NCBI RefSeq assembly: GCF_035594765.1 | Contig: NC_085846.1 | Coordinates: 13,069,190 to 13,133,189 of the forward strand | DNA length: 64,000 bases | Source: Anolis carolinensis | Taxonomy: Eukaryota | Direction: 5' to 3' | Part shown: positions 21,470 through 45,997 of the stretch, piece after piece | Layout: each line of letters starts with the position of its first letter | How positions within the stretch are numbered: position 1 is the first letter of the stretch | Notes under the pieces: generated by a model | The model's input: the letters and a program-made list of their open reading frames with translations, nothing else | What the model was told of the DNA's origin: nothing | Database searches by the model: none | Program-made: the position numbers and the translations under genes

Positions 21470-21941
21470 ATGGATATCCAGCGATCCCTTGAGCTGCTGC
21501 ACATGACCGTCTACTCCCAGAGCGTCTCGCCTTGTGGGAAGTATTTAGCGGCAGGGAATAACTATGGAGAAATTGCCATATTCAGGTAACTAGGCCTCTC
21601 TTAACACAAAGGGTGTTTTTGGAGTGAGACATTAATTTGAAATTATTTCAAGTTACATTTCACGGTCTTTCCCTGCTCTTTACAGTCTTTCAGCAGCACT
21701 AAGTTCAGAGGCCAAGGAAGAGAGCAAGAAGCCAGTGGTCTCCTTTACAGGTAGATATATTTTTTTAATTTTATTGAAAAACGTATAAGTGATAAACATA
21801 CATACCACTGTGCGAAAAGTATAGAACGATAACATGAATACACACACACACACACATATATATATATAGAAGAAATAAAGGAAGAGGGGGAAAAAACATG
21901 AAAAAGGTAAAAAACGAAAGAAAGAAAGAAAGAGAAAGGAA

Positions 21942-21990
<49 letters not shown>

Positions 21991-22893
21991 TAAAAAAATT
22001 AGGGCCTAAATTCTCCCTATGGACTTAACATCTATACATAAACAATACAATCACAGGTAGATAATTATGGTCAAGTGAATCTAAGCAATTCCCGTTATTG
22101 TGTTGTCAAAGGCTTTCATGGCCAGAATCACTGGGTTGCTGTGAGTTTTCGAGGCTGTATCATCATGTTCCAGAAGCATTCTTTCCTGACGTTTCACCCA
22201 CATCTGTGGCAGGCATCACGAGAGGTTGTGAGGTATATTGGAAACTTAGCAAGGGAGGTTTATATATCTGTGGAAGCTAGGTCTTGAAGATGCAAGGCTT
22301 TTCTATGCTAATCAAGGTGATTGATTGCAACATTCACACTTGCCTCCAACAGATGAGTTCTTTCTCCCATCTTGGACTTTCCACAGATATATCAACCCCA
22401 CTTGCCTAGTTTCCAACAGACCTCACAAACTCTGGGGTTGCCTGCCATAGATGTGGGTGAAATGTCAGGAGAGAATGCTTCCGGAACATGGCCATACAGC
22501 CCATAAAACTCACAGTAACCTAATTCCCGTCATTTTTGTGACTGTTAAAATTCATTTTATGTGGCCATCGAGATACTGGACTACGACTCCTATGTTCCTC
22601 ATTATTAGTCATCATGACTAGAGCCAATGGGAGTTCTGATACAGTCACACCTGAGAGGCTGCAGTTTATTCTGTTTAGTCAGTGGAATGTGGTTTGAATT
22701 TAGATACAATGCTTGTAGATATGATGTCTCCCTTGAAACTGTCCTTTAACTTTTCCTCAGCTTCAAAGCCACAAGTGCTATTGGATTGCAATTATCATTA
22801 TCCCGAGTCCGTACCATGAATGATCAATGTGCTTGTTGGCATTGAATATTTGCCTTTGATGTTGTTAGCCATATTGGGAAATGGGGCCAGGAT

Positions 22894-22937
<44 letters not shown>

Positions 22938-25688
22938 CAACAACAACAAAGTGATTGGAATTGTCGTTAAATAATTTTGGGGGACCCTAAAGAGTCCTGA
23001 GACCATTATGTAAGAAAAATCTGTTGGCCCTCAGTATCCACACACTTTCTGTCCATGGATTCAACAGCCCATTGAAGGCAACCATAAGGCTGATGTGGTC
23101 CTGTATGAAAATGAGTTTGACATTCTGGATTAGGTACACAGAATCCCTGTAAAAGTGGAAAAACTACATATATATATACCTCATCAGCCTTACGATGGCA
23201 CTCTAAGAATCTCTAGGTCCTCCAGTGTGACTCTATGGTCAATTTCTGGCAAAAGTTTCCTAGTTATTTACCAATAAACTGATCTTGTAGTAATCAAAAC
23301 TTCAAAAGCCAAATCCACAGATATGGCCGACTGTTTATTTTTTCCAGTTTTCCATTTATAGCACAGCAAAGCATTTTTCTTTTTAAATCATATCCCAAAG
23401 CCTGGTGTCAGGTTATGTCATTGAACAAATACATAGAAGACTCAGTGTGTTTGGGATTGACATTATTTTCCTTGCAACCCTAATTTCAATAGTTTAGAGC
23501 TAAAAAGAGACACATGGGTCCAGGAGAATACTTTGCTTTTTCTGTTTCACATCAGAGAGTATACTTCATTATGGGAGTCCCCAATTCTGAGGAATGCAGA
23601 TTTTTGGTGATTGTTCATGGTAATCTGAGGATATCCCTTGAGTCATCTCAGGATGTTATTAAGTCCACCTTAAACCCCACTTTTTATTTCTGTAGCCCAC
23701 GATGGTCCCATCTATGCCATGGTTTCCACAGACCGACAGCTATTAAGTGCTGGCAACGGTGAAGTCAAGGCTTGGAACTGGAGTGAAATTGTGAAGAAGG
23801 TAAGGAAGGGTTGCCTGACAGTCACCTTACTATACAGGGTGTTTGAAAAAGAACTCCCTATTCAACATTTAATTTAAATGGTGAATAGGGAATTCTTTTT
23901 CAAACACCCTGTATTTCTCATGATCTATGTTGTTGTTTCATAACATCTATTTTCTGTGTAACTAGGGCTGCAAAGAAGCCTGGAGTAGAAGGCCTCCTTA
24001 TGGGTATAATTTACTTTCTTCCTTCAGTTTTCCTTATCGCCTTTTCCTTCCTTTTACAGACATCCCAATGCAATATTCCTCTTTCATTTTCTTTTCAGGA
24101 GCAGCCTAGAAGTGCCAGAAATCAACAGCCTTCAACTGAACCTCAAGGTAATAACCACAGTGGTGCAGTGTGGGAAGTTTCAAATGTGGTTCATTCAACT
24201 ACCTCACATCCAGAATTGCTTTCCTTTTTTAGGACAATAGTCTTCTAATGGCTGGTGGAGACTGTTCTATTCACATGATGGATCTCGAATCTGGAAGCTT
24301 TACTGTGAGTATTTGGAGCCTAAGATGAACAATTTGTGGGGAAGATGGTCAATATCTCTTAATTTTTGCACAAACTCAAACTGATCTAATCTTTTGTTAC
24401 TAAATCTGGATAAAAGGGTCTAGCCTGTCAACCTTCTCAGCAGATAATGAATTTTTGTGTCCATTTACTTTTCTTCCAAACTCACAAACTTAAAACTTAT
24501 TTTGAAAAACCCTACATTCTTAGAGTTTCGGTTTGCAACAATGATATAGTATCGTAATACAGTAAGACCCCTGAAATCATGGCACCCATACTAGCGGTTT
24601 CACATACCCAGACCTGGGGAAAAATGTTCTCTAGAAATTTTTCAGGTTCTCTAGATCAGAGCTTCTTACACTTTTTCTTCTGGTGACCTCTTTCTGCCCA
24701 AGAAATTTTTACGTGACCCCAGATACATAGGTACATAATGTAAAATAGTTATTAAAAAGTCAAACATTTGCTGATAATAAATCAGTATTTGCAAGACTTA
24801 CTAAACAGGCTGTTTCTCCTTTTTGTGCATTATGGCCAAAGCATTTTCCACAGAGTCCATTGTAAACACTGTACTTCGTTGCTAACAGATTTGTGTAAAT
24901 GACTGGCATCAGAAACTTTTTTACTGTTGCCAATTTTTTTCACAACCCCAACATTGAGCTAAGGGGACCCCATTTGGAGTTGGGGTGCACAGTTCAAGTA
25001 GTGACTGGTATGCTTCTTTTGGAAGTTTCCATAAAGCTGAGAGAAATTCTTAGAGAAGGATGCCTTTGTTGCAATGTCTAGGTCCTCTGATGGAAGTATT
25101 TTTGGACCTGAAGTCGGGTAATTAATGGTGTTTGATTATTGTATCTTTGGTTTCATCTAAGTATGGTATAACCCGGAATGTATCTCACATATATATGAGG
25201 GTCTTACTATACAAGAACCTTCCCCAGAAAGGGAAGTGCTATGTTACAACTATTTTCTCAGTCAACACTGAGCACCTCCATGTAGTTCTGTTTTATACCT
25301 CATTTTTCAGGTTCAAAAAAACCTTAGTATTTCCACAATTCCATTGCAGATATTACTGTACATATTTTGCTCAAGATATAGTACAATACAGTGGTTCTAT
25401 TTGCTCCCCTCCCTTCCTGTTAGTCTTCTCTGTTGACTTCCTGGAAACGTTTAGTACTTTGAACATATGTAATGACTGTTTACAAGATAACAATTCTAGA
25501 TGGGATGGTATAACTAATTGTTGCTTCTAGATAATTTTAAGGCAAAATTTCTCCCGTTTCAAACTTATTTGAAGCCCTGCGTCTATAATTGTGCCTTTTT
25601 CTTTTTAAATAATCTGTAGATATGGTTCCCAGGACTGTATGGAATTGTATTGCTTTTTTTCCTCCTGAACATCATTGCCAGTTTAGAC

Positions 25689-25744
<56 letters not shown>

Positions 25745-28700
25745 CAACAACAACTTTATTTATAACCCGCTTCCATCTCCCCGAGGGGGGAGCGGTTCAC
25801 ATGGGGACATTTCTGCTAAATGAAAAGCTTTTGTAATCCACTTTTCTTCTGTTGGTATTTGTAAATTTTCCCCAAGCTTGGGGCATATAATATTATCTGC
25901 CTGACGATCATATATTGTAATGTTTTTGCGTTTATTGATTTCACTTGTTCATTTTGTAGTCTTAGTAAAATTAGTTCAGGGTTTAATTGTGTGGCTTAGA
26001 AAAAAAATGTAGTTTTTGTATCAAATTCCAAAACTGTTTTGATTTAGATCAGGTCTACCTAGTTCTGTTTTCTGACACCCAAGTGTTATATCCATGAACC
26101 GTTTGTTTAATCAGCCCCACTGCTGGCATGGTGGGTTTTAATTACCTCTGCTCTGTCTTGCGCACAGCATGAATTTCAGGGTCACAGCGATTACATCCAC
26201 TGCCTGGCTCTTCGAGAGCAGCTCCGGGAGTGTTTGTCAGGGAGCGAGGATGGCACTGTGAGGCTTTGGGGTAAGGACCTGTGGTTTGGGGTTCCTTTCC
26301 AGTCTTCCACCAGCTTCTTAGTTACTTGCTTTTGTATCTTGGGAAGTTTGTCTTCAAATGTATATGCTTCCAGCTCCTTTAGAATCAGCTACAGAGGTTG
26401 TAGTACACTTTCCTAAAGAATTCCTTAAATCTAGATTCTATCTAGGCAGAACCTTATCAGTGGTGGCCCCAGTAGATGCAGTCCCCAAGTTACAAACATC
26501 TGACTTGCAAATGACTCATAGTTAAGAACGGTGGTGAGACAACAGGAAGTGAGAGAAATCTACCCCTAGGAAGGGAAATTCACTCCTGAAAGAGTTATTA
26601 TGGGGGAAAGGAGTCTCTACTGAAGTTTTATCTCCAATCCTTGTTTCCACAACAAGCCAAAATTTTCAATGATCACAGGGACAGAAAGTGAGATGAAATC
26701 TTCTGAACAGGGGCACAGACTGCAAAACAAACACCACAGGGGTGTTAACCCTTGTCTATGCTATCCAAAGCTAGCTGTGTGTATGCGTGTGTGTATGTAT
26801 GTACGTACATATGTACATATATACATACATGGCTGTAGTTACACTTAAAAACATACCTGTTCTGACTTACATAGAAATTCAACTTAAGAACAAATCTACA
26901 GAACCTATCTTGTTCATAACTTGCATTGCCTGCATTGTGGAACCAGCTTTTTAACTGAACACAGAGCCTGAAAAAAAAATCTTTTTTGGATTACAGCCGG
27001 CCATGATGGCTACATAATTCTAGGAGTTGAGGAACAATTTTTTTTCTCATAACTGAAAAGACTGCCAAAGCTGAACATGCAGGAATTTAGGAAGATAATG
27101 AAAGAAATGAGCCTTTAATCTAATCTGTCATTTTCCATTATCTGGTAATTGCCAGATTACCAGTGTACACCTACACTTACTAATTTTACTTTTTAAGAAT
27201 TGTGATTTAGATTTAACATTTACTTTATTGTATGAAGGAACTAACTAAGCCCACTTCCAAGTAGTCCTTGCCTTAAAACCTTCTGAAATTAATGAGGTCA
27301 TCATAAATGGGCACAGAGACAGACAGACAGATGCTTTGAAATGTATTAAGAAATGGGATATTTATTCTACAAACATGAATTTGTTTCCAGAATGTTTGGG
27401 GGCAAACAAGTGCAACATATGCCACAATTACACATTTATTAATTGCTTTATAAAATACTTCCTAATTTTCTTTGGTCCATATGCTAGAATTGTGACAATG
27501 GCAAGCTGTACAGTTGGAAAGAGGAAGAAGGTTTTGAGTGCTTTTATTGATGGGAAGATTGAGACTATTTAAATAAATATATTACATTTCTGTTTTTCAG
27601 ATTTACGTACTGGAAATCAAGTCCAGTCCATTGAGGTGCATAAATATGAGGTACGATTATTCTCCTCCATCTTCCTGCAACTCAAGAGATTTGTTCATCC
27701 TCGCTATTTTTAATTCTGCACCTGTCCATCTGCTTCCATATTTTCAATTATTTATGAAATAATCTTTTAACATGCAATTGCTGCTACTAAAAGAGAATGA
27801 GAGGAGTATGCAATTCACCCAAAGTTTAATTATTTCACATATGTAACTTCACATTTTACCGAAACAACACAAGCCTTCAGGGGAAATGGAGCATTACTCA
27901 TTTCTGATCAGGGTCTTCATGCGTTGGGCTTGACATCCTAGCATAACCAATCAGGGAGCCAATTTCCTCTGGGCATTTTCCCTTAACACTCATCTCAACT
28001 CCCTTAGGAATGTAACCGGCCGCAGAATGGGAAGTGGATCCGTTGCTTGGCAACAGACTCCGACTGGATGGTAAGTGTGCCTGATTTCTGTCAATGAGCG
28101 AGAATTGCAAGACATCCCACAGTGCACTGGGCTAGCGGTCACCCATCCTGGTTGCTCAGTTACTGGGCTTGAGTAGCCTCGTGGGCTCAGCCAGCATCAC
28201 TAACCTTCATGCCTCCTCCTTTGGAGAACCTTGTTCTGCCTGTGCTTTTCTGAAATTGATGTTCAAGGCAAGGAGCTGGAGAAGTACACAGACTCAGAAA
28301 TGAGGGCAGCAGGGGATTGTGAATTGTCTGTAGAACAAGCAAAAGAATTGAGGAGACAATATGTGTCATCAAAAGATTTTAGGCTCCCTTTGGTTCCCAA
28401 TCTCCATTTTCCTTCCTATAGGTGTGTGGTGGGGGGCCAGCGCTCACTCTGTGGCACTTGCGGTCAGTTACACCTACAACGATATTTCCCTTGCCCCAAT
28501 GCCAGCAGCAAGTCATGTTTTACCAGGACCTGGTAAGTCTTCTTCCTCTGGACTAAAGATCTATAGCAGGCAGGCTGTTAGGAATTGTGGAAGTTGAAGT
28601 CCAAAACCCCTGGAGGGCTGAAGTTTGCCCAAGCCTGATCTATAGTGTCCCTTCTTTCTCGGCCTCATTCCTCACTGCCCTTTCGTCTTTTAATTCCTGA

Positions 28701-29867
28701 ATTGCTCCCACTCTTGCTTCTTTGGATTTTCAAGGGGACATGCAGCATTTTTCCCTACTCCTACTCTCTGAAAAGGGACTTTTTTTTTACTTCAACTGGC
28801 TATGCCATTTGGTGTAGTCCAAAGTGTAGCTTTTCCAAGCTCTGCCCTTCTCACTCTTTCATGCTTGGAATTGCCTTTTACTTGCTCGTATCTCACCTAT
28901 ATTTGCAGTAATTATCTCTCCCCCACCCCCCGCACCTAAATATGTTTCTCTCAGATCCTTTCTGCTGGCCACAGCCCAACCATCAACCATTTACAGATCA
29001 GCGGGGAAGTGAAGGCCCAAATCCCTTGCATGCTGCATTGCGTCCACTCTCTTTCCATCAATGAACAATCGCCAGAGCACAAGGTACCTTATAAATTGGA
29101 AATTGTATGTAAAAAAGTCGTACTACATCCTGTTAGTGGCATACGCACATACATGCATGACATTTTGTTGGTTTTGCAGAGGTTAGTATTCCCTCCCTCC
29201 ATAGTATCCAAAGCATCTTTCTTAGACTTGCTGTAGAACATTGAAGCCCTGTCTTGCAGGGCTATTCTATGGCTTATGCAGATTAGGCAGGGTTTGAGAT
29301 GTCTGGCTGTGTTCCCGTAGCCAGAAGAGAGATGATCACATCACTGCTGAGGTCTACTGAGTACACCAGTTTCAGTTTGTTGCAGTCATTTCTTGTCTAG
29401 CTACAGAGGCATAATCAGGCACCTCTCCAGTTTTCCTTACTCCTCCTCTTTGGATGGAATGGTAATTTCAGGGTCCATACAAAGCATCCAGAGGTGTGGT
29501 AAATGGTTCAGGGTGCATAGGTTTGCATGTGGAACAACGGTGCCAGTGACTCATACAGGATTGCAGCCATAGTGTCCTCTAAAAAGAAGGAGGCTTCTGT
29601 GAATTTTGAATCTTCTTGGTGGTGTTCAATGCAATTTTGAACAATCATTCTGAAAAATGTGAATTTGGAATTGGAAGTGAGAGATGTCGAAGATTTGAAA
29701 GAAGAGGGATGGCCCTGGGGCAGTGGAAGGGGCTTCAGGAGTCTTCAACCCATTGAAAAATTTCTTGCTCTCTCCATCCCCAGGTCCTGACCGCTGCCGG
29801 AAGCAGCCACTGCATTGATGTCTTTACTAACTTCGGTTATCGGGCCTTTTCCCTTGTCTTCACCTAG
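21470..29867 (+). CDS. THOC6: THO complex subunit 6 (WD40), 327 aa from the ATG at 21470
   Basis: Exons 21470-21585, 21686-21750, 23696-23799, 23966-24003, 24099-24147, 24233-24304, 26168-26270, 27601-27650, 28008-28070, 28422-28532, 28955-29083 and 29784-29867; all GT-AG and in frame. Peptides [61 protein letters not shown] and [13 protein letters not shown] few N-terminal codons might come from an upstream exon. Confidence 0.97.
22098..22520. mobile_element. Penelope-type terminal repeat, inverted pair
   Basis: tgtgttgtc.aaggctttcatggcc...ggcaggcatc followed by its inverted copy. Same family at 38580-38810, 42132-42650, 47250-47643, 49158-49647 and 55483-56279. Confidence 0.6.
23835..23911. 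mobile_element. 77-bp Tc1/mariner-type MITE (hairpin)
   Basis: TA-CAGGGTGTTTGAAAAAGAA...TTCTTTTTCAAACACCCTG-TA; TA TSD; almost entirely inverted repeat. Confidence 0.75.
26477..26932. mobile_element. Tigger/Tc1-mariner-like non-autonomous element; second copy at ~32840-33235
   Basis: Two dispersed homologous copies starting (ca)gtcccc.agttacaaa and ending ttgttcataa. Confidence 0.55.
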
Positions 29868-30864: not shown

Positions 30865-33800
30865 CTAAGCTTCTCCTGCCTCGGACATTTCCACACTCTC
30901 ATACATATGTCCATCCTCCATTCTTTTCAGTTCCTTCAGATCTTCCTTATGTTCTTCCTTGAACATCCGAAGGGCTGCCATCATTTCTTCATAGGCACCA
31001 TCATGTTGTGGCTCAGAATCGGGCATCAGGTATTGCATGGTATTGGTCAGCATCACTTCGGCCTCACAGCAGAGGGCCTCCAAGCCTAAAGGCCTGTAGA
31101 TGGCATTGCCGGATTTGTAGCACCTGCTGAAGAGGTTGACAGATACCAAGAAGTAGTGAGGGAGGTTCCCCTTGTTGAGGGTGTGGATTAGGAGCCTTAG
31201 GAGGGTCTGGATTGAGGACAGGAGAGTCTCCCATTGTGACGTCTGAGGATAGATTTCACAGCACCACAACAGAATGGTCTACAAGAGAAGAAGAAATGTT
31301 AGATAGACATGATAGTCATTAATTGTGGTCTATAGCTCATGAGTCCCAAAGACAGAGACCATCAAGGGACACCTAGTACCAAATAGGTAGCACCTCCCCC
31401 CCCCCCCCCAAAAAAAATCTATATACCTATCATCTGAAATGATGGTATATAGCATTTTTAGAATTTTTGCTTTCATCACCCCCAGGATTCCTAGTGATAT
31501 TGTTTACTCAGCAAGCGTACCTTGAGGTGGTAGGAAGTCAGGATGCTGCCATATTCTGGTGTCCATCTTGTCATGTTGATAAACTTCAGCACCCGCAGAG
31601 CTGCCCCTCTGTGTCCCCCATCTGCATCAATATCTTCGAGAAGCTGAGTTTCCGCTCGGCTAAAACAGAGCCTAACACCAGGTCGAGACTATAAGAATGT
31701 GGCATTTACAATCAGCTAATATAGTTTAAGAAAAGTCAAACAGCACATGTTTGACTGCTATGAAGCCAATTCCCAGCGTTTTCAGTGGGGCTAACTTCTG
31801 AGTAAGTGTGCAAACGACTAGAGCACAAAGAAATATTTACACAGTAGAATAAATGTGGTTTGCAACCACTTTAACTACCATGTCTCAATGCTATGAATTA
31901 CTGGAATTGTAGTTGATTTTAGAGTGCTGACACCTCCCCAAACTACAACTCCTAGGATTCCATAGAATTGAGAAATGACAGTTTAAATGGTGTTAAATTG
32001 CATTGATTCTACAGAGTAGGTGTACCCTAAGACCTGAAGTGACTGCTGAATGAATTCAAACTACAATGAAAGAGATTCTACCTAAACATTAGGTAAACTT
32101 AATGGTGAAAGCTTTTTGGCAAAGGAATATGCTGCCTTGGAAGGTGGTGGGGGTCTCCTTTTCTGAAAGTTTCTAAGCAAAGGCTGCATGGCCATATGTC
32201 AGGAGTGCTTTAATTATATGTTCCTACGTGGCAGAACAGGGTTGGACTGGATGGCTCTCGTGGTCTCTTATGAGTCCACTTAAAATTTCTCATCTTAAGA
32301 ATATGAAAATCTGCTTTGAAATGGAATCCCTTTTAATTTTCAAGAGTAAAACTCAGGAAGTGCTCCAGCTCAGTCAGTCAGCTTTGGATTTTGAAATCAT
32401 TTCTGGATTTGTGACGATTAGATTTATTTTCTTACCTCCAAAATCCTCCTTTGGAGACCAGCTCCGGCCCAACTTCTCGGACCACTCTGGCTTTCCGGAG
32501 GAAGTTGGCCCTTTCATTGGTCAGGTCTCCGTCCCACCAGTCGGAAAGGTGGGCGAGGTCCTCCCGTAACCACTGGTTGGAGAGCTTGAAGGCCCCCAGG
32601 ACGGCAGGCACCAACCTCACTGGGACATTGTCACAGCCATCATTGAAGGTCAGTTGGATGGCTGGACCATCCAGATCCAAGGCCTCCAGTCTGAAACCTC
32701 CTATCAGAGCATAAAGAAAAGAGATGTTATTCTAGGAATACGTATGTTGCTAATTTAATATGCCCTTAATTTTGTTACAGTGTTTTTCCAGGTGGAAATG
32801 CTAAAGGTGCTACTCGACTTCTAGAAAATAATATAGTGTACTGGAAGTCCCCGAGTTACAAATCCCCGACTTACAAACGACTCGTAGTTAAGAATGAAGT
32901 GAGACAACAGGAAGTGAGAGAAATCTACCTCTAGGAAGGGAAATTGAGTCTTGAAAGAGTTCTTATGGCGAAAAAGTGTCTCAAGTAAAGCTTTATCACC
33001 AATCCTTTCCACAAGCCAATTCAAACAAGCCAAGTCAAAATCTAATTAACACAGACAGAAAATGAGGGAATCTTCTGAACAGGGGCACAGACAGCAAAAC
33101 TCCACAGCGTGTTAACCCTTTCCTATGCTACCCATATATATATCTGGAGTTGCATTTAAGAAATGTACCCTTTCCGACTCACAAACGAATGCAACTTAAA
33201 AACAAACTTATGGAACCTATCTTGTTCATAATGAGGGAGGGCGGGCAAATGAAGGAGGGCGGCAAAGACTGGGTCAACTGGCTTCTATGATTTTCTTTCC
33301 TCTCTCCACTGAATAACCCTCAATTTATCCATTAGTCACATCAAAAACTCATAATTTTGGCCAAAAAAACCTGCCCGTGATATCTGATCTTTGAGGAAGG
33401 CACCTGACAACAGCTACCTGTTGTCAAAGTTTGAACGATTTAACCCCCCAAAATAAATAAGTTCACCTCTTATGTGATGGTCTATCTTGGGAACTCGGGA
33501 AGGGAAGAGTCTTCGCTGGAACACTGGGTCTAGGTTGGAAAAGGCAGAAAGAAATTGCTGCATTAATTTAAGCAAAGAGTTATGAATGGTGCAGAATCTC
33601 AGAATGGGAAATAACTGGAAAATAGCATTGCTTATTTAATTTTCTTTGAACTCACCATTTTGCCGAGGATGGGTATATGCTGGCAAAATGGGAAGAAAAA
33701 CAAGAGAAAACGAGTTAAGAAAAAAACCGTCGAAGGAAACAGCTGTCCATCGTTTTTTTCCTGCCATGATTTCTGAACATTTAAGAGCTACATATTAAGA

Positions 33801-36800
33801 AAGTAATGTTTTAAAAAATATAGCATTCCCCCTTAATGGCAAAAAAAGAGAAACTCTTAATTTTACACCCCTTTAATTGCCATAGCTCACTGCTATGGCA
33901 TCCTGGGAGTTGGAGTTTTGCAAGTTCTTTAGCCTTATCTGCCAAAGAGCACTGATGTCTCACCAAACTACAACTCACAAGATTCCATAGCACTGAACCA
34001 TGGCAATTAAAGTGGTTTCAAACCACATTCATACAACAATGCATATGCACCCCTTTGCTCAGTATCTAAGTTAAACTTTCAGAACAAGGGTGACAACCTG
34101 CATTTCCCTAGAAGGGCCACATGTTTTCTCACTTTAAGCAATAAATACCAGGAAGTCTGAAGTATCCCAGTCACCAGATAGTGAAACTTCTATGTCTGAG
34201 GATTATGGGGAGATGCTACTCTGCTGTGTGAACCCTACCTGGATCCAAGGCAGTTTGAACACAACGGTGCAAATCCTTCAAGATTTGTTTAGGTTCTAGG
34301 TTGTGGTGACTTAGGCTCTCCTGTGAAAAAAAAAGGGAAGAAGGTTGTTGAGTCCTCAAGAACTGAGCTTGGACATCAAACTGCATTCATTCTACCGTGT
34401 AAATGCACCCATTGTTTCCATTTGCATTGTTTTATATTTATTGGCACCAGTATTCCTTGGCAGGGAAGGTGAAAGACCTTATAAAACTACAGCTTCTATG
34501 AATCCATAGGCCTTAACCATGGTGCTTAAAGCGGTGTCCAACTATATTCATTCTACAGTGAGGATGTACTGGGCTTTGCACAGTGGGCTAAATTGCTGTG
34601 CTGCAGCAAATCCTGACAATCGAAAGGTCAGCAGCTCAAGCCCGAGTTGGGGTGAGCATCTGCCATCAGCCCCAGCCCACCTGCCCACCTAGCAGATTGA
34701 AAGCAGAAATGTGAGTAGATAAATAGGTACCGAGCCCAGGTCAGGGTAAGCACCTGCCATCAGCCTCAGCTCACCTGCCCACCTAGCAGATCGAAAGCTG
34801 AAATGTGAGTAGATAAATAGGAACCAAGCCCGGGTCAGGGTAAGCACCTGCCATCAGCCTCAGCTCACCTGCCCACCTAGCAGATTGAAAGCTGAAATGT
34901 GAGTAGATAAATAGGTACCGAGCCCGGGTCAGGGTAAGCACCTGCCATCAGCCTCAGCTCACCTGCCCACCTAGCAGATCGAAAGCTGAAATGTTAGTAG
35001 ATAAATAGGAACCAAGCCCGGGTCAGGGTAAGCACCTGCCATCAGCCTCAGCTCACCTGCCCACCTAGCAGATCGAAAGCTGAAATGTGAGTAGATAAAT
35101 AGGTACCAAGCCCGGGTCAGGGTAAGCACCTGCCATCAGCCTCAGCTCACCTGCCCACCTAGCAGATCAAAAGCTGAAATGTGCGTAGATAAATAGGTAC
35201 CAAGCCCGAGTCAGGGTAAGCACCTGCCATCAGCCTCAGCTCACCTGCCCACCTAGCAGATCGAAAGCTGAAATGTGAGTAGATAAATAGGTACCGAGCC
35301 CGGGTCAGGGTAAGCTCCTGCCATCAGCCTCAGCTCACCTGCCCACCTAGCAGATCAAAAGCTGAAATGTGAGTAGAGAAATAGGTACCGAGCCCGGGTC
35401 AGGGTAAGCACCTGCCATCAGCCTCAGCTCACCAGCCCACCTAGCAGATCGAAAGCTGAAATGTGAGCAGATAAATAGGTACCGCTTTTAGCGAGGAGGT
35501 AAGAGAAGGCATGCTCCTCTGCATGGATGATGGAGTGATAGCACCCCCCCCCCTCCAAATGGCCAGAGTTGAGCACAGTCTTCAAGATTCTAGAAATAAG
35601 ATTGGAAATGCCTTTACCTCTCTTTGTGTATTGTCTGTCCTTGTAAATTGTATAATGGCATTGAATGTTTGCTGTATGTTTGTTCTGCGTAAGCCACTCT
35701 GAATCCCCTTCGAGGTGAGAAGGGCAGGGTATAAATACTGTAAATAAATAAATACCCATTGTTTTAATTTGCATTGCTTTCTACGAATGGTGGACTGCCT
35801 TGAGTTCTGATATTGGCAGGGAAGGACCTTGTGAAACACCAATTGTTTAAACTGGCAATTTTTCCTATTTATAAAAATGAAGAAAATACAACCCAAATAA
35901 GTAAACAAAGTACAAAAACATGAAAATAAATCAAATAATAATGTAAAAATAAATACAAATAAAGGACATAAAGTAAAAATAAACAAAAATAAATTTGAAA
36001 TAAACAAGGGAAAGGTAAAGGTTTCCCCCGACATTAAGTCTAGTTGTGTCCGACTCTGGGAGTTGGTTCTCATCTCCATTTCTAAGCTAATTTACATATG
36101 TTTTAATTGTTATAATGTATTTTAATGATGTATTTTTATAGTTTTAATTGATTATGTGTACTGTTTTTGTTTTATTATTATGTTATTGGCATTAAATGTT
36201 GCCAACTGTTGTAAGCCGCCCTGAGTCCCCCCCGGGTGAGAAGGGTGGGGTATAAATGCTGGAAATAAATAAATAAATACATAAGCTGAAGAATCGGTGT
36301 CGTCCGTAGACACCTCCAAGGTCATGTGGCTGGCATGACTGCATGGAGTGCCGTTACCTTCCCACTGGAGCGGTACCTATTGATCTACTCACATTTGCAT
36401 GTTTTAGAACTGCTAGGTTGGCAGAAGCTGGGGTTAATAGCAGGAGCTCAATCCACTCCCTGGATTCAAACCGCTAACCTTTTGGTCAGCAAGTTCAGCA
36501 GCTCAGTGGTTTAACCCGCTGTGCCACCGGGGCAGAAAAAATAAGCAAAAGTAAATTTTAATTTTTTAAAAAGGAAATAAAGTTTAAATTAATAAAAATA
36601 TTAAATAAAGTAAAAATTAATAAAAATGAAACAAAGTAAAACATTAAAAATTACGCAAAAAAGTAACAATAAATTTAAAATAAACAAGAATAAAGTATAA
36701 CTAAAAAGGAAATAAAAATAAGGTAACAAAATAAAAATACATTATAAATTCATAAAAACAAAGCCAATAAAGTAAAATAAGTAAAAAAATAAAGGAAATC

Positions 36801-37295
36801 AATGCGAGCCCCCACTTCTAGTTCCTCCAACTTGTCCAAGTCCGTCTCGTCGTCTTCGTCCTCCCGGCGCGCCTCCTGCCGATGGCAGTGGATCTCCACG
36901 TAGATCTCGGCCAGCGCCTCCAGATCCAGCAGGGCTTGGGAGCCCCAGCGATGGAGGGGCAGCCCCTCCTCGCGGAAGATGTAGGTGGGCAGCGCCTGCT
37001 TGCACCGCGGAGGCGCCTCGGCCAGCCCTCCGCTCACCGGCGCCAGCTGCGGGTTGTATCTCACCGGGAGGAGGAAGTCGAAACCTGCGGAACTCCCTGC
37101 CGCTTGAAGGTGCAGCCCTTCGCCGTAGCTGCCGACCGGGACGGGCTCCCCGGGGAAGAGCCCCGTGCTGGCTTCGTAGGCCCACTGGGACACCTTCCCC
37201 AGGGCGCTTTTGGCCAGGAGAAAAGCCCGCCCCGTCCGCCAGGCCTCGTCCCCCGCCAGGAAGACCCGCTCCGTGTAAAAGCGCTCCAGGCTCAT
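30865..37295 (-). CDS. Mab-21/cGAS-like nucleotidyltransferase-fold protein, 484 aa (MAB21L3-like C-lobe; probable pseudoenzyme)
   Basis: Exons 37295-36816 (phase 0), 34320-34239 (phase 1), 33529-33467 (phase 1), 32700-32436 (phase 2), 31671-31521 (phase 0) and 31278-30865, totalling 1455 nt with no stops. Family motifs in order: GSYGEGL..GFDFLLPV, LEPKQILKDL, GPAIQL..VRLVPAV, WRLCFSRAETQLL..DGGHR, LTSYHLKTILLWCCE.YP...W, LPHYF..VNLF. Confidence 0.9.
34640..35483 (+). repeat. Minisatellite of ~9 x 94-bp units derived from an internal Sauria-SINE-like segment
   Basis: The unit marker tcagggtaag recurs at 34741, 34835, 34929, 35023, 35117, 35211, 35305 and 35399 (period 94), after a diverged first unit. 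The unit contains acctagcag..gaaa..aatgtgagtagat.aataggtacc, as in the SINEs of this window. Confidence 0.9.
36008..36532 (-). mobile_element. Sauria SINE split by an L2-like 3' fragment (~36090-36282)
   Basis: The SINE tail half and head half flank a tgtaagccgccctgagtc..(aaat)n insert. Confidence 0.7.
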
Positions 37296-37353
37296 CGCTT
37301 CGGGCCTAGGCTTCGCGGATGAGGCAATTCCTCGGCTCTCCTTTTCCGTCACA

Positions 37354-37370
37354 GCTTTCGCTTTCGCTTT
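37354..37370 (-). promoter_or_regulatory. Tandem IRF-binding element/ISRE upstream of the Mab-21 gene
   Basis: The minus strand reads AAAGCGAAAGCGAAAGC, matching the IRF-E consensus GAAA(G/C)(T/C)GAAA(G/C)(T/C), ~60 bp upstream of the ATG of a CpG-rich first exon. Confidence 0.6.
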
Positions 37371-38845: not shown

Positions 38846-41800
38846 CTATGTGGTGATGATTGCAGATGGCTCTGTGGAAAGGGAGGATTGATTCCCGGCC
38901 CCAATCTCTGGGTCTTGGTCCCAGTGGAACCCGAGAGCGTTGACCAAAGACCCCGAGCGCCCGCTGATGAAGCGCAGGACCGTGTTGGGGAACATCGGCT
39001 CAGCTTCGAAGCCCATCCCGGGACCAAAGTTGGGCCCGAAGGCAAAGACGCGCCCCAGGTTGGTCCGGAACGCAAGGTACTCCACGTAGTTCCCAAAACG
39101 CCCCGTGACTTGGATAAATCCCTCTCCGTGGTACAGCTCCATGCCAGACGGGTTGCCCGCCGTACTCCCTTCGGTGACAGACCATGAGTCTCCATAGCGG
39201 ACCTGAATGCTGCAATGAGTAGAGAGAGAAGGTGTCGGCATGAGTCTCTTTAGTGTGACTATGGTGAAATTCCACCAAAACTGACCATAAAATTGTATCC
39301 TCTCTAAGCATCTCTAGGTCCTCTTGCATGCCACTATGGTCAGCATCCAGTGCAAGTTTACCCTAGAATTATACTACAAGGTATAAGGATTCATAGAGAA
39401 AACATTTTAATCCAAGCTGTGAATAATCAGATCTGTAACCGTCAAACCCGCAAATGTGGACAGCTGTACGTTTTGTTTGATGCAGCTGCTCAAGGGCCTC
39501 GGATGGTTCAGTGCTATGAAATCACAGAAGCTGTGCTTTTACAAGATCTTTAGCCTTCACTGCCTAAGAATGCTGGTGCCACAGCAAACTACAGGACTCC
39601 ATAGCATTGCGCCATGGCAATCAAAAGTGTCAAACTGCATCAAGTCTAAAGTCTAGACGTACCTTAAGTAGCAATCATGAATGTGGAAGAGTTCTGGTCA
39701 ACTTAACTAAGGCCCCTTCTACACTGCCAGATAATACACATTATCTGCTTTGAACTGATTTATATGAGTTTACACTGCCATATAATCCCATTCAAAACAA
39801 ATGATCTGGATTATTTTAGTCCCCTTCTACACTGCCATATAAAATCCAGATTATCTGCTTTGAACTGGATTATATGGCAGTGTAGACTCATACAATCCAG
39901 TTCAAATCAGATAATGTGGATCATCTGCTCTGCTGATCTGGATTATATGGCAGAGTAGATCCAGCCTAAGTAGCTAATGTAGAATATTAATTATGTTTTG
40001 CAGATTTCAGGTGCTTGATGCACCTCTCTGGTCCTCAAGGTGAATGGGAACGAATCTCAGGGTGAGAGCACTCCTTTGAAAAGTGTAGGTGATCTTCATT
40101 TGTTAGACTTTTTCTTTTACTTGCATGTCTGTTGATGCTTAATGTGTGATGCTTAACCGCAGTGCTAAGGTCTGATCCTTAAAACATCACCCTTGCTAAC
40201 ATCTCTATGTCCCACCACTTGTGGCAAGTGATGACTGACATATTGTCTGTCTGTCTGTCTGTCTATCTCATTTCTTTGCTGCCTTTCTCCCAAAATGAGA
40301 CCCAACACTGCTCCTAGACACAGGCAATTTAAAATATATTCACAATGAAATCAAATAGCAATGAAAACCAGCACAGCATATAATCATTTTCAAGACTAAC
40401 AGCAGTTTTAAAAGATAAAACACTAATAAAATGCTCCCCCAACACTTTAAAAGCCTGCTTAAACACACAATTTTGGCATTGAATCCTCAGGGTCTCTGAC
40501 AGTCCCTTCCTGGCAATCCTTGTCTCTAAAGATATACATACCTTAAGAGGTACCTGTCATTTGCTCTTATTTTTAGGGCAGTCACGGGGCCATCCAGTTC
40601 ATTATTCGAATGGTCAAAATATTCTCCACTGTCACCACCAAATTCTCCAGAGAAAGAGGCAAGCCTTGCCAGGGCTGGATCCATACAAAAAGATGCGTGA
40701 AAGGTGTAATAAATAAATAATAATAATACATGATAATACACTTATTTATATTCCTCAGAGGAACTCAGAGCAGATTACAGAACACATATGAGGCAAACAT
40801 TCAATGCCCTTTACACAGCGACATACAATACACATAGAGAGGTAAAGATCTTCCTCTTCTTTCATCTTACGGTCTTACCTTTTATGTGTTTTTAATGTAA
40901 TTTTTATCCTGTATTGTTGTTTTAATTGATATATTGCATTACTGTTTTATCTGTTTTATATTGTGATTGTATTATGTTGCTTATATTTTGTTCTTATGTT
41001 GTTTGGGCCTCTGCCCCATGTAAGTCGCCCCGAGTCCCCACGGGGAGATGGTGGTGGGGTATAAATAAAGTTTATTTTATTTTATTATTATTATTATTCA
41101 GCATCTGGAGGCGATGCTCAACTTCTGGCCATGGGGAGGTGCTTTTGTTCTGTTTTCCCATGCTTAGGAGCCAGAGGTTCTGTGAAATGGTGGGAAATCA
41201 AAAGTTTTTGCTGCCAGCTGCTTACGTCCACCTCACATAACACAAATAATGACCAAATGGGGAATAAAGCTGGAGAGAAATTGAGGATCGGAGAGACGAA
41301 AGAGCTGGGCTGTTACAGTGGAAGTGGTCAGCTGGCAGGAAAAAAAAGTTTTGATTTTTGAAGATTTCAAACAAGGGAGGCTTAGTGGGATTATAAATAA
41401 TAATAATCTTTTGAAAGCTAAATAATTACACTAAGCATTCCAGTACACAATAAATGGAGATTATATTATTAGTATGCAGTTCCCCCACCCTTTCAGTCTG
41501 GGAGCCAGATCTGGCTCTTCTGTTAATTGTTCTGTTTTGGCACCCTCCAGAACTTTGATCTGTTGTGCTTTAATTATCGGGATTATGGGATTCCTGCAGG
41601 AAGTTCAATCTTGGCAGCTAACAAAAGACAAAGAAGCTTAGAAGTTAGGGGATAATTATCATCTGAGATATTAGAATTTTCAATAATTTAATCCAAGACA
41701 TGCAGTATAGTCAAAACCGCAGTCGTCTGCTGCCTTTTAATGGGATTCAGGTTGCCGTGTTATAACCTGCTCCAAAAGCTATTTTATTAAAATAAGCCTG

Positions 41801-43344
41801 ATCTATCATGGTGAATGTACTCTTCATTCTACCTGTTGATTTATGACGACCTTATCAATTTCGTAGAGCTTTCTTAGGCAAAGCACACTCAGAGCTAAGT
41901 ATGAAATAGAGCCTATGGCATGTAATATTATTGGTGGTCTCCCATCGAAATACTAGCCAGGGCTGACCCTCCTTAGCTTCCAAGACCATTACAAGATCTG
42001 GTATTTGTAGCCTTTTTAAGGCATGCTAGCAACTCTTGCGGAATGATAGTCATTATAATAATTATAATAGTGTAAGGTGATTGTTATCTGGTGTTTTTGC
42101 ACTACATAGATATAGGAATTTGATCTACTTTGTGTTGTTGAAGGCTTTCATGATCGTAATCACTGAGTTGCTGTGAGTTTTCCGGGCTGTATAGCCATGT
42201 TCCAGAAGCATTCTCTACTGATATTTCACCCATATCTATGACAGGCACCCTCAGAGGTTGTGAGGTCTGTTAGAAATTAGGCAAGCGGGGTTTATATATC
42301 TGTGGCATGTCCAGGGTGGGAGAAAGAACTCTTGTCTGTTTCAGGCAAGTGTGACTGTCTTAATGTTGCCTGGCTGCCAGTGTTGCAATTTGAAGCCAGG
42401 CTTTGAAGCTGTAAGTCTATTCAATGCTAATCAAGGTGGCCAATTGCACCATTCACACTTGCCTTAAACAGACAAGACTTCTTTCTCCCACCCTGGGCAT
42501 TCCACAGATATATAAACACCACTTGCCTAGTTTCCAGCAGACCTCACAACCTCTGAGAGTGCCTGCCATAGAGGAGGGCAAAATGTCAGGAGAGAATGCT
42601 CCTGGAACATGGTCATACAGCCCAAAAATCTCACAGCAACCCAGTGATTCTACTTTGTCTGCCATGGAATCCTGGGATTTGTAGTTTGATGAGGAATTTA
42701 GAGAACTACAGTGGCAGAACTTTCTGGTACAGAATCACAAGTGTATACAAAACTATAAATTCCCCTGATTCTGCAGTGTCTGGCTATGAAAAGCCGAGGC
42801 TGGATGGCCATCAGTCCAGAGTGCTTTGATTGTGTATTCCTTCATGGCATAAGGTTGGACTGGATTGCCCTCATGGGTTCTAACTCTACAAATCTATGAT
42901 TCTGCGATGGTTAAAAATGGATCCAAACTGCTATCACTGTGCAATGTGGGTTCCCCATTGATATCCCATGATAGATGTGTTAAAAGCCAAGGGCCCAAAG
43001 TTATTGCCTGAGTCACCTGCCTGAATCGAAATCCAGTCCTGGCAGGACTCCATCCAGTCCCAGAGGATTGCCACTTTTTTTGGATAATAACTTCAGCCCC
43101 CCTGCAACTATTGGAAAGTTTGGGGGGCTATCGTCCAAAAAAAAAAAAAGAGAGAGAGGAAAATTTCCAAGCTGCACCCACTCATAAATCAACCCGCTTA
43201 CCTTGCTGCACATCCTCACATTTCCATCATTCCTATGATTGAAAGGTATAATGCTATTTTGTAACAAGTTCCCTCTTCCTTAATCTTACCTGGGCTTCCT
43301 GATACTCCGACACAGAGGAAGGGTAGGAGAATTAATACCATCAT
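38846..43344 (-). CDS. ZG16-like secreted jacalin-related lectin, 183 aa
   Basis: Exons 43344-43290 (55 nt; signal peptide MMVLILLPFLCVGVSG), 40674-40542 (133 nt) and 39209-38846. Peptides SGEFGG..F.HS.N.LDGPVTALKIR, QVRYG..WS and PNTVLRFISGRSGSLVNALGFHWD closely follow ZG16. An acceptor at 43368 implies an upstream non-coding exon. AATAAA at 38833-38828. Confidence 0.92.
39711..39966. mobile_element. PIF/Harbinger-like MITE (GGNNNNTCTACAC termini, TAA flanks)
   Basis: taa-ggccccttctacactgcc...ggcagagtagatccagcc-taa. A related gggtgcatctacactgtagaa family is scattered across the window (e.g. 5315-5530, 33815-34050, 48360-48571, 63110-63320). Confidence 0.55.
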
Positions 43345-44198
43345 CTCAGCGGGTTAAATACAACGGACCTGAAACAAATTAAAGTTACAGTTTATCCAAG
43401 ACCTTTGGATTTGTTATTTGGTCTGCAGTCCCCTATAGAGCTGAACCCAGTGGGATTTCATTTCTAAACAGGCAAGTGTGTTGTCGGTTCCCATCAAATC
43501 GGATTGACTTATGGCGACCCTATAAATGAGAGAGTTGAGATACTCAACCAGGTCTACTCATAAATTCCTGAGCTGGAGCTGCAACTTCAATTTATATTAT
43601 AAAGCACTCTTGCCTTTGTCTAGTGCCTTCTGCTTTCTCCAGTATTATTGTCTTTTCCAACCAGTTCTGTCATCTCAGCATATGATATAAAGTAAGTTTC
43701 ATCATACTTGCATCTCATCGGAATTCGGGTGCTTGGCTTGCTATGAAAATCATTTATCTTTATGTCAGTATCCAATACCTATTTGCAAAATTTTGGTAGT
43801 TTCTTTTGTGCTTCTCTCAGATTTACCTTGCTTCAGAGGAAGACCTGCGAACGGTGGTTAGGAGCACAGCGGTGTTGTGACCTTCCCCTTTGGTTTGATG
43901 CTCAGGAAAGAATTTCATCTGATCACAAGGGTTACTCAGTCCCTCTCCTACAAGAAATAGGGCTTTACCTGGTTGGTTTGGCATCCTCTTGTCTTATTAT
44001 GGGAGGTTTGTTTTCACCTGTCGTTTGCAGCAGGGAAAACGAACAGGTCTTCTATTGTGTTCTAATATTTCCCCTCCTATTCACCATTCAAAGAGGGGCA
44101 TTCAGTTCCAAAAGCACTAAGCAATGGACAAATGTGCGCGTGTGTGGGAGGGGATACAAGTGGATTATTCCTTTGCTTATAGAGCTTGGAAATATATT

Positions 44199-45310
44199 TA
44201 CTAGCTTGGGTACCCAGCATTGCCCAGGTTATTTGAAAATGTCAATTTTAATTGTACAAAATGCATATTGTTGTAGATTAATTGCAACTGACATCATGCC
44301 AGGTTAACCCTGAGAAACTCCATCAGTCCTTAAAGTTTGTTATGTTGGGCAAATTTGCTCTAGATGCATCATTGGTGGGGTTCAGTGTACTCTTTGGCTG
44401 TAGGGTAAACTACAACTCCCACTATGGTGGTCAGTCTCCTCAAATCCCTCCAGGAGTCATGGGGGTTCTGTGTGCCAAGTTTGTCCAGGTCCATCATCAG
44501 GGGAGATCACAGTTTCCCTGGTTGTGGGTGAACTACAACTCCCAGAAAGGAAAGTCAGTTCCCCACAAACTTCTCCGGTAATCAAATTTCGGTATATCAG
44601 GTGTGCGTGCCAAGTTTGGTCCAGATTCATTGGTGTTTGGGTTCACAGTGGTCTCTGGATGAAGGTGAACTACAACTCCCCCAAATCAAGGTGCATTTCC
44701 CCCAAAGACCTCCAGTATTTTTTGCTGGTCATGGGGGCTCTGTGTGCCAAGTCTGGTCCAATTCCATCATTGGTGGAGTTCAGAGTGTTCATTGATTGCA
44801 GGTGAACTATACATCCCAACTCCAAAATGTCCAGGCCAATTCCCCTCAAAACCGACCAGTATTCAGATTTGGGCATATCGGGTATGCATGCCAAGTGTAG
44901 TCCAAATCCATCCTTGTTTGGGTTCATAGTTCACCCTACCATCCTTTAAGAAACAATTGAAAACCTGGGTGTTTGGGCTGGCCTTTGGAGAGACAGCTAT
45001 TGGATGACCAGCCTCATAATTCTATTCTGAATGTTATTAGGTTCCTTTCATCAGGGTATTTTAATCTAATGAGTTTATCTTATAATGCTGCTCTAGTCCC
45101 CCCCCCCCCCCCACCTTTGAAGCTGACTGAATTGCATTGGTGGTTGTTTGATATTATTACTGTTGTATAAACCTTTGTTTTAACTTCTGTTTTATCATCT
45201 TCTTGTGTTTTAAACTGTGTATATTGTTAATGTATTTGCGCTATTACTTTTGTAACATTGTGAGCCGTCCCGAGTCCCTACGGGGAGATGGTGGTGGGGT
45301 AAAAATATAG

Positions 45311-45375
<65 letters not shown>

Positions 45376-45997
45376 GTGCGCTCTGGATGTAGGTGAACTA
45401 CAACTCTTAAAAATCCCTCCAAAGACCACCAGTTTTATTTTCATGATCATGGGGGTTCTGTGTGCCAACTTAGTTCCAGCTCCAGCACTGCTGGAGTTCA
45501 GAGTGCTCTTAGATTTCAGGTGAACTATACATCCCAGTACGTACATCTCCTATGAATCATGGTGAATTCTCCCTAAACCTCTCGAGTATGTTCAGTTGCT
45601 GGTCAATTCCGCTGTTTGCTGTGTGCCATAGAAAAGAATAGGAAAGGGTTATGGGAGAGGCAGTGGGTGGGGTCATGCAAATTCCACACCAATGGAGAGA
45701 TTCAGAAACATTGGGATGTCTGTGATGGAGAAAAAACAGAAAAATTAGTATGAAATTGTTTTCATGTGAAAGCCTTCACTTGGGTGGTGGGCAGTATGGT
45801 GTTTGTGGAAGACATTGGCAGGGCTCTTGGACATGTTCTTGGCACTCTCAATAACCTGCAATGTCATTGGAGGGAGGGCCATTGGTGTCTCCTGAGTAGT
45901 AGTAGCTACTATAGCTATTTGTGGAAGTGCGAGCTTGTCTGTGTAAGTGGACACCCCAGCCAGACATACATATTTTTACTTTTATTGTGTGTATAGT
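44199..45997 (+). mobile_element. Helentron/HINE-like non-autonomous element with internal subrepeats and a nested L2-like tail
   Basis: Starts tactagcttgggtaccc..tgccc; repeated gtgtgccaagtt and gaactacaactccc blocks; ends tttattgtgtgtatag. The class assignment is tentative. Confidence 0.45.

What the first reader, a model, noticed from the sequence alone, without database searches (positions are those of the whole stretch)
30865..37370. Unassigned intact cGAS/Mab-21-fold gene with a broken catalytic triad and an ISRE at its start: candidate interferon-inducible pseudo-nucleotidyltransferase
Seen in the sequence: six exons splice into an uninterrupted 484-aa frame carrying all Mab-21/cGLR motifs in order. 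The activation-loop GS (GSYGEGL) is kept. The metal-binding [DE]h[DE] reads G-F-D, and the third acidic position (hDhVPA-type strand) reads V-R-LVPA. There is no cGAS zinc thumb or transmembrane helix, and there is an acidic insert REDEDDETDLDKLEELEES. Established knowledge: cGAS/cGLR catalysis needs three acidic residues; catalytically degenerate family members (e.g. MiD49/51) act as ligand binders or adaptors; as I recall it, human has no Mab-21 gene beside THOC6. The C-lobe resembles MAB21L3, but the N-lobe and synteny do not. Inference: a separate vertebrate Mab-21 lineage, apparently absent from this locus in human, that may act as an IRF-induced nucleotide/cyclic-dinucleotide binder, decoy or scaffold in innate immunity.
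Basis: partly seen in the sequence, partly recalled or inferred. Interest (0 to 1): 0.9.

Follow-up and report, generated by a model that had tools for sequence, protein, structure and literature searches.

The report
Interferon-linked dead cGAS-like protein of lizards
Lizards and snakes keep an unnamed relative of the virus sensor cGAS that has lost its enzyme residues but is conserved and sits behind an interferon-type switch, while turtles keep copies with the catalytic residues intact, so this is an overlooked reptile branch of an antiviral gene family.

Summary
The orthologue's fold matches cGAS (Z 25). In the anole the catalytic triad reads G-F-D…R. The third acid is lost in all 21 squamate orthologues, yet dN/dS is about 0.2 and the pocket residues are kept. 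An IRF/ISRE element lies 56–88 nt before the ATG in six squamates and one turtle. It is not MAB21L3: Komodo dragon and leatherback carry a separate MAB21L3. The family was found only in squamates and turtles, with a lungfish canonical cGLR as nearest outside relative. Most turtle copies, a tandem cluster, keep D-x-D…D, so the enzyme was lost on the squamate stem. Best reading: an interferon-induced, catalytically dead cGLR-fold adaptor that works through its N-lobe inserts and an acidic Tyr-Glu-Glu tail. Induction, binding and partners are inferred, not shown; no anole RNA data could be read. No paper on the family was found. The scan had noted the ISRE in this window and a different dead cGAS paralogue elsewhere in this genome, but not this gene on other DNA.

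The parts
37354..37370 (-). IRF-E/ISRE-type element (two full GAAA half-sites plus a third AAA half-site), 70-75 nt before the ATG
   Evidence: Only strict match in the window, chance 0.14; same place in 5 other squamates and one turtle
36816..37295 (-). Exon 1 (aa 1-160): spine helix, GS loop, G-F-D, acidic insert; CpG-rich
   Evidence: exhaustive search finds squamate and turtle relatives only
37128..37133 (-). Gly55-Ser56 of the activation loop
   Evidence: invariant in alignment A1
37077..37085 (-). Gly71-Phe72-Asp73: first acid replaced by Gly, second acid kept
   Evidence: aligned to mouse cGAS E-F-D; Asp73 in 21/21 squamates
34239..34320 (-). Exon 2 (82 nt)
33656..33679 (-).
   Evidence: same exon in five squamate loci and turtle A
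33467..33529 (-). Exon 4 (63 nt), second half of the conserved clade-A insert (aa 188-216)
32436..32700 (-). Exon 5 (265 nt): strand carrying the third catalytic position
32615..32617 (-). Arg245 in place of the third catalytic acid
   Evidence: K/R/N in 21/21 squamates, Asp in most turtle copies
31521..31671 (-). Exon 6 (151 nt): pocket motifs (Arg305, Ser309, Glu312, His353, Lys355)
30865..31278 (-). Exon 7: Mab-21_C helical lobe, C-terminal helical extension, acidic tail, stop codon
   Evidence: Pfam Mab-21_C E 2.5e-11
30889..30918 (-). Acidic tail with conserved Tyr481 (Y-E-S-V here; Y-E-E in 17 of 20 full-length squamate orthologues)

Best explanation
An IRF/interferon-induced, catalytically dead cGLR-fold protein that acts as a soluble adaptor in squamate antiviral signalling. 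IRFs bind the element just before the start and switch the gene on (inferred from conservation). The protein folds like cGAS (shown on the A. sagrei orthologue's model) but cannot bind the second metal because Lys/Arg stands at the third acid (shown in sequence; loss of activity inferred from cGAS mutants). Its strongly acidic character makes DNA or RNA sensing unlikely (inferred). It most likely works through protein contacts at its N-lobe inserts and an acidic Tyr tail that looks like a tyrosine-kinase/SH2 site, with the retained pocket perhaps holding a nucleotide as cofactor, as in MiD51 (inferred). It descends from an intact-triad cGLR still represented in turtles.
For: Fold: Z 25.0, rmsd 3.5 A over 318 residues to mouse cGAS. 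Third acid K18/N2/R1 in 21 squamates; single Ala changes in any triad residue inactivate porcine cGAS (PMC4897736). dN/dS 0.17-0.27 among squamates, upper limits at most 0.39. pI 5.1-5.7 in squamates against 8.8-8.9 in lungfish and invertebrate cGLRs. IRF element at -56 to -88 in 7 of 8 clade-A loci, about 0.002-0.005 chance per locus. Inserts lie in the N-lobe stretch that is the protein interface of MAB21L1 and the Drp1-binding region of MiD51 (PMC4897736). Tail Tyr in 20/20 full-length squamate orthologues. Non-enzymatic shrimp Mab21 proteins activate IKK-epsilon by direct binding (PMC12928593).
Against: No expression, induction, binding or partner data for any member. Pocket residues are also kept in intact cGLRs and may be structural. 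The loose motif was chosen after seeing the sites, and the loci are related, so the chance figures are not independent. The leatherback copy and two turtle clade-B copies have no element near the ATG. The SH2-site reading rests on my own knowledge of pY-E-E-I motifs and the anoles have Y-E-S-V.
Confidence: 0.45

Rival explanations
1. Interferon-induced decoy or sink: the dead pocket binds cGAMP, another cyclic dinucleotide or NTP and dampens cGAS-STING signalling as negative feedback; the basic residue at the third acid position replaces the metal in binding phosphate.
For: Ser56, Arg305, Glu312, His353, Lys355 and Tyr397 are invariant in full-length squamate orthologues; the 301-360 block is the most conserved part (0.88 against 0.77 overall); the third position is basic in 19 of 21.
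Against: The same residues are kept across the fold family; conserved inserts and tail are not needed for a simple sink; no binding data.
Confidence: 0.2
2. A dead Mab-21 protein with a constitutive or tissue role (epithelial or myeloid), where the element is read by a lineage IRF (IRF1/2 basal, IRF6, IRF8) and not by an antiviral response.
For: IRF family members share the AANNGAAA core and IRF1 drives constitutive expression (PMC7819612); dN/dS near 0.2 and a single copy in squamates show no arms race; no GAS site within 600 nt of the start.
Against: Tandem GAAA half-sites at a fixed place before the start are typical of interferon-stimulated genes (own knowledge); turtles show a tandem cluster with broken copies, as immune genes do.
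Confidence: 0.17
3. Residual or altered catalysis: with Asp73 invariant and Asp71 in many species the protein still binds one metal and carries out a slow transfer or hydrolysis.
For: D-F-D in 12 of 21 squamates; GS loop intact; the MAB21L1 authors did not exclude activity with two of three acids (PMC4897736).
Against: The first acid is Gly or Asn in 9 of 21 squamates spread over several lineages, so it is dispensable; the anole has only one of three acids; a basic residue cannot bind the metal. Model coordinates could not be inspected for a substitute acid.
Confidence: 0.1
4. A plain orthologue of MAB21L3, as automatic names suggest.
For: Several database entries are named 'protein mab-21-like 3'; the C-lobe resembles MAB21L3 by eye and the lungfish relative's nearest Atlas cluster is MAB21L3.
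Against: Komodo dragon (XP_044308377.1) and leatherback (XP_038228246.1) have a separate, typical MAB21L3 of about 390 aa with no GS loop, beside their copies of this family (P0032, P0006, P0064). No bird, mammal or fish protein matches exon 1.
Confidence: 0.02

Closest known systems
cGAS (MB21D1)
   Same: Same two-lobed nucleotidyltransferase fold (Z 25); GS loop and pocket residues align; link to interferon.
   Different: About 20% identity; triad broken; no zinc thumb; acidic, not basic; 171 residues between second and third acid; extra C-terminal helices and tail.
Invertebrate-type cGLRs (coral Sp-cGLR1, oyster Cv-cGLR1)
   Same: Top of the wide fold search (Z 21.6-21.7, tied with mouse cGAS); the lungfish relative scores best against Sp-cGLR1 (113 bits against 71 for MAB21L1 and 70 for cGAS).
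   Different: These are active nucleic-acid-gated enzymes with a full triad and 50-90 residue spacing (PMC9980059); the anole protein meets neither.
MAB21L3
   Same: Similar C-lobe; degenerate active site; source of the automatic names.
   Different: A separate gene in the same species; MAB21L3 lacks the GS loop, which this family keeps; different N-lobe and length.
MiD49/MiD51
   Same: Dead NTase-fold adaptors (Z 19.5 to MiD49); the functional analogy favoured here.
   Different: They are membrane-anchored mitochondrial fission receptors; this protein has no membrane helix and weak sequence similarity (27 bits).
Shrimp LvMab21-1/2/3 (PMC12928593)
   Same: Mab21 proteins acting in antiviral signalling without nucleic-acid binding or cGAMP synthesis.
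   Different: Crustacean, no shown orthology; they act upstream of IRF, whereas this gene appears to be an IRF target.

Membership tests
Mab-21/cGLR superfamily | Mab-21_C and Mab-21 Pfam domains | tested here: met
   Exon 7 Mab-21_C 44 bits over cut-off 24.1; PF03281 above cut-off in Lacerta (27.7), just below in A. sagrei (19.3)
Mab-21/cGLR superfamily | Caged NTase core plus C-terminal helix bundle | tested here: met
   A. sagrei orthologue model pTM 0.79; Z 25 to cGAS
Active cGLR (Li et al., PMC9980059) | G[S/G] activation loop | tested here: met
   Gly55-Ser56
Active cGLR (Li et al., PMC9980059) | [E/D]h[E/D] ... [E/D] triad | tested here: not met
   G-F-D and R in the anole; third acid absent in 21/21 squamates; present in most turtle copies
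Active cGLR (Li et al., PMC9980059) | 50-90 residues between second and third acid | tested here: not met
   146-183 in squamates, 164-171 in turtle A, 134-151 in turtle B
Active cGLR (Li et al., PMC9980059) | Ligand-gated second-messenger synthesis | not testable with these tools
   Needs biochemistry
cGAS | Zinc thumb and basic DNA-binding surface | tested here: not met
   Gap opposite the thumb; orthologue pI 5.6, net charge -17
MAB21L3 | One-to-one orthology | tested here: not met
   A separate typical MAB21L3 exists in Varanus and Dermochelys
MAB21L3 | Tree position within the MAB21L3 clade | not testable with these tools
MiD49/51, ITPRIP, TMEM102 | Transmembrane anchor | tested here: not met
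   Max KD19 0.93-1.25 in five family members
Interferon-stimulated gene | Conserved proximal ISRE/IRF-E | tested here: met
Interferon-stimulated gene | Induction by interferon or virus | not testable with these tools

The most novel reading that the evidence does not exclude
Reptiles carry a second, cGAS-independent cGLR branch missed by published surveys: turtle copies with an intact triad are active second-messenger enzymes, and the squamate orthologue became an interferon-induced dead regulator of that or the cGAS-STING pathway, giving a dated natural enzyme-to-pseudoenzyme pair in vertebrate innate immunity.
Probability: 0.25. Interest if true: 0.85.

Novelty: new variant of a known kind. 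Interest (0 to 1): 0.62.

Why it matters
In vertebrates the only cGLR with an established immune role is cGAS. The main survey took vertebrate members by annotation only and counted two per turtle species, so this family, with its long active-site spacing, seems to have been passed over. It offers candidate active vertebrate cGLRs (turtles) and a matched dead orthologue (squamates) with an interferon-type promoter element. That makes two open questions testable: whether vertebrates signal through cGLRs other than cGAS, and what catalytically dead Mab-21 proteins do in immunity.

Tried and rejected
Six-exon model: rejected, because orthologues need both small exons. MAB21L3 orthology: rejected. 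Pseudogene: rejected by intact frames and dN/dS. Membrane-anchored type: rejected. Chance ISRE: unlikely; in the window alone 13 of 100 shuffles give a match, and only cross-species position makes the case. The joined anole protein was never searched or put in a tree: searches went exon by exon by reference, and the A. sagrei orthologue stood in for folding and trees. A tree with cGAS, MAB21L1-4, MB21D2, ITPRIP, TMEM102 and MIEF was left out because none was held under a reference. Both trees are quick trees; the careful search did not finish. Turtle synteny: no THOC6, HCFC1R1 or jacalin match within 10-kb flanks, inconclusive. Paper searches for the family and its LOC names found nothing. No GAS site near the start. 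One contig look-up (P0039) was blank.
Full report
1. Observation. The gene lies on the minus strand from ATG 37295 to stop 30865. Exon-by-exon translation shows no stops, matching phases and GT-AG introns. The correct model has seven exons: 37295-36816, 34320-34239, 33679-33656, 33529-33467, 32700-32436, 31671-31521 and 31278-30865, in all 1479 nt or 492 aa. The Anolis sagrei orthologue P0024 is 492 aa and matches the window exon by exon at 72-94% in the five larger exons. The same seven-exon plan holds in Lacerta, A. sagrei, Paroedura, Python, Hemicordylus and the turtle Natator. A spliced turtle transcript contig maps to the Natator gene in seven blocks. Scan notes call this genome the green anole, which fits the A. 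sagrei identity.

2. Fold and active site. Exon 7 hits Pfam Mab-21_C (E 2.5e-11). The AlphaFold model of P0024 (pLDDT 75.5, pTM 0.79) matches mouse cGAS at Z 25.0, rmsd 3.5 A over 318 residues. The wide search ranks oyster and coral cGLR1 and mouse cGAS together (Z 21.5-21.7), then MiD49, beetle cGLR and MAB21L1 (19.1-19.5). Residues 1-442 form the core and the rest is an extension. The family profile aligns its D-F-D with cGAS E-F-D and its third position with cGAS S-V-D-I. In the window these read Gly71-Phe72-Asp73 and Arg245. Single alanine changes at any of the three acids inactivate porcine cGAS (PMC4897736), so loss of cGAS-type catalysis follows. I could not inspect model coordinates, so a substitute acid is not formally excluded. 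There is no zinc thumb and no membrane helix.

3. The family. An exhaustive HMMER search with exon 1 over 1.84 billion proteins gave ten hits; the eight named ones are squamate or turtle and two are unnamed contigs of squamate type. Three further searches added 21 squamate orthologues, two turtle clades (A and B) and one lungfish protein. No bird, crocodilian or mammal sequence appeared. The word-indexed searches are weak for absence; the exon-1 search is the stronger evidence. Quick trees join squamates (100) with turtle A (99) at 93-94 support, with turtle B (99) outside; the shared exon 3-4 insert agrees. The lungfish protein P0075 is a 371-aa canonical cGLR with E-F-D and D, best matched in PDB by coral cGLR1 (113 bits against 71 for MAB21L1 and 70 for cGAS); it is on a long branch, so its place is unsure.

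4. History of the triad. Second acid: Asp in 21/21 squamates. First acid: Asp 12, Gly 7, Asn 2, scattered over lineages. Third acid: Lys 18, Asn 2, Arg 1, never acidic. Four turtle A copies and 10 of 11 turtle B copies keep D-x-D and D; both Pelusios copies lost the first and third. The simplest reading is loss of the third acid on the squamate stem, then free decay of the first. Turtle activity is not assured: the Lys after the GS loop of the invertebrate cGLR is mostly His or Gln in this family, and two B copies have changed the GS serine.

5. Not MAB21L3. The supplement of PMC9980059 lists typical MAB21L3 proteins from Komodo dragon, leatherback and coelacanth. They are about 390 aa, lack the GS loop and differ plainly from the Komodo and leatherback members of this family (P0032, P0006, P0064). 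Their C-lobe does resemble the lungfish protein by eye, and the Atlas puts a MAB21L3 cluster nearest to it (TM 0.78). A common cGLR ancestor with MAB21L3 is therefore plausible, but untested by a tree.

6. Selection and synteny. Pairwise dN/dS on whole codons, exon by exon for the anole, is 0.22-0.27 against five squamates and 0.17-0.26 among them, with upper bootstrap limits at most 0.39. The order HCFC1R1-like, THOC6-like WD40, this gene, jacalin (ZG16-like) gene holds in the window, in Paroedura and in Hemicordylus; Lacerta, A. sagrei and Python show the WD40 and jacalin neighbours. The THOC6 name rests on the WD40 gene standing head to head with the HPIP-domain gene (own knowledge of that pair). 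Turtle copies lie as a tandem cluster, with many fragments, 1.1-1.8 Mb from the start of a 131-136 Mb record; no squamate neighbour was found in their 10-kb flanks.

7. The IRF element. The strict pattern GAAASYGAAASY matches once in the window, at 37354-37365 (chance 0.14). It recurs at -70 in A. sagrei, -72 in Lacerta, -76 in Paroedura and -88 in Natator A; Python has the variant with one extra A at about -64 and Hemicordylus a GAAANNGAAA core at -57. A looser pattern, fixed after seeing the sites, has 0-2 other matches per 20-35 kb locus, and the element is the one well-aligned block of the upstream sequence. It is absent before the frameshifted-looking leatherback copy and two turtle B copies. 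Retention over the squamate-turtle split (about 280 million years, own knowledge) argues for function; it does not show induction.

8. Mechanism. Shown: intact conserved gene, cGAS fold, broken triad, conserved element, acidic protein (pI 5.1-5.7 in 20 of 21 squamate entries against 8.8-8.9 for the lungfish and invertebrate cGLRs). Inferred: IRF-driven induction, no catalysis, poor nucleic-acid binding. The stretch between second and third acid is 171 residues against 106-113 in the canonical relatives, made up by a variable acidic insert (125-160) and a conserved exon 3-4 insert (188-216). This N-lobe stretch is the protein interface of MAB21L1 and the Drp1-binding region of MiD51 (PMC4897736). 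The tail keeps a tyrosine after acidic residues in 20/20 full-length squamate orthologues, Y-E-E in 17, like Src-family substrate and SH2 sites (own knowledge). I therefore favour an adaptor (0.45) over a nucleotide decoy (0.2), a constitutive tissue role (0.17) or residual catalysis (0.1). Shrimp Mab21 proteins give a precedent for non-enzymatic antiviral action (PMC12928593).

9. Novelty. Database entries are uncharacterised or carry best-hit names. Paper searches found nothing on the family; the library lacks most subscription papers. The cGLR survey chose vertebrate clusters by annotation and used a 50-90 residue spacing, and counted two cGLRs per turtle species; its main table is cut in the held copy, so inclusion of a family member is not fully excluded. 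Dead Mab-21 proteins are a known kind; this is a new variant of it, with intact-triad turtle relatives as the more surprising part.

10. Limits and handling. After it, one exon was sent by reference to the PDB sequence search and the earlier exon-1 job was collected; after that the window was used only in local scripts. No contig was taken for human and no human sequence was fetched, so the claim about the human locus is untested. Named Mab-21 families could not enter the tree because no reference to them was held.

Noticed in passing
L012:10850-12888 (Lepidochelys kempii, P0055): A turtle clade-A copy is predicted with its last Mab-21 exon spliced through two small exons into a PRY-SPRY (B30.2) domain; similar linker sequence appears in P0005 and P0043. 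Either a real cGLR-PRYSPRY fusion or a merged gene model.
   Followed up: partly
L007:10001-24511 and proteins P0042, P0058-P0074: Turtles carry a tandem cluster of clade-B paralogues, most with an intact D-Y-D and D triad, six exons and no IRF element near the ATG in the two checked; candidate active vertebrate cGLRs.
   Followed up: partly
P0075 (Protopterus annectens, gene span over 150 kb): Lungfish 371-aa protein auto-named mab-21-like 3 is a canonical cGLR with a full triad and pI 8.8, closest in PDB to coral cGLR1; not typical MAB21L3.
   Followed up: partly
P0005 (Pelusios castaneus): A 1038-aa model joins a clade-A and a clade-B copy; both have lost the first and third acids, independently of squamates.
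   Followed up: partly
window 34650-35484: 94-nt tandem repeat, 8.9 copies, 95% match, in intron 1; looks like an amplified piece of a lizard interspersed repeat.
   Followed up: no
window 38849-45965 (-): Jacalin-domain (ZG16-like) gene directly upstream in the same orientation; conserved neighbour in all squamate loci.
   Followed up: partly
window 21470-29867 (+) and 5928-10549 (-): THOC6-like WD40 gene and HCFC1R1-like (HPIP) gene; about 11 kb apart here against under 3 kb in gecko.
   Followed up: partly
L001:about 9825 and L011:about 9982: Lacerta has a second, reverse IRF-like site 175 nt before the ATG; Hemicordylus has a TATAAA 19 nt before the ATG, just after the element.
   Followed up: no
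L002:10001-22805 (Dermochelys): The leatherback clade-A copy P0006 looks frameshifted in its last exons and lacks the IRF element; possibly decaying.
   Followed up: no
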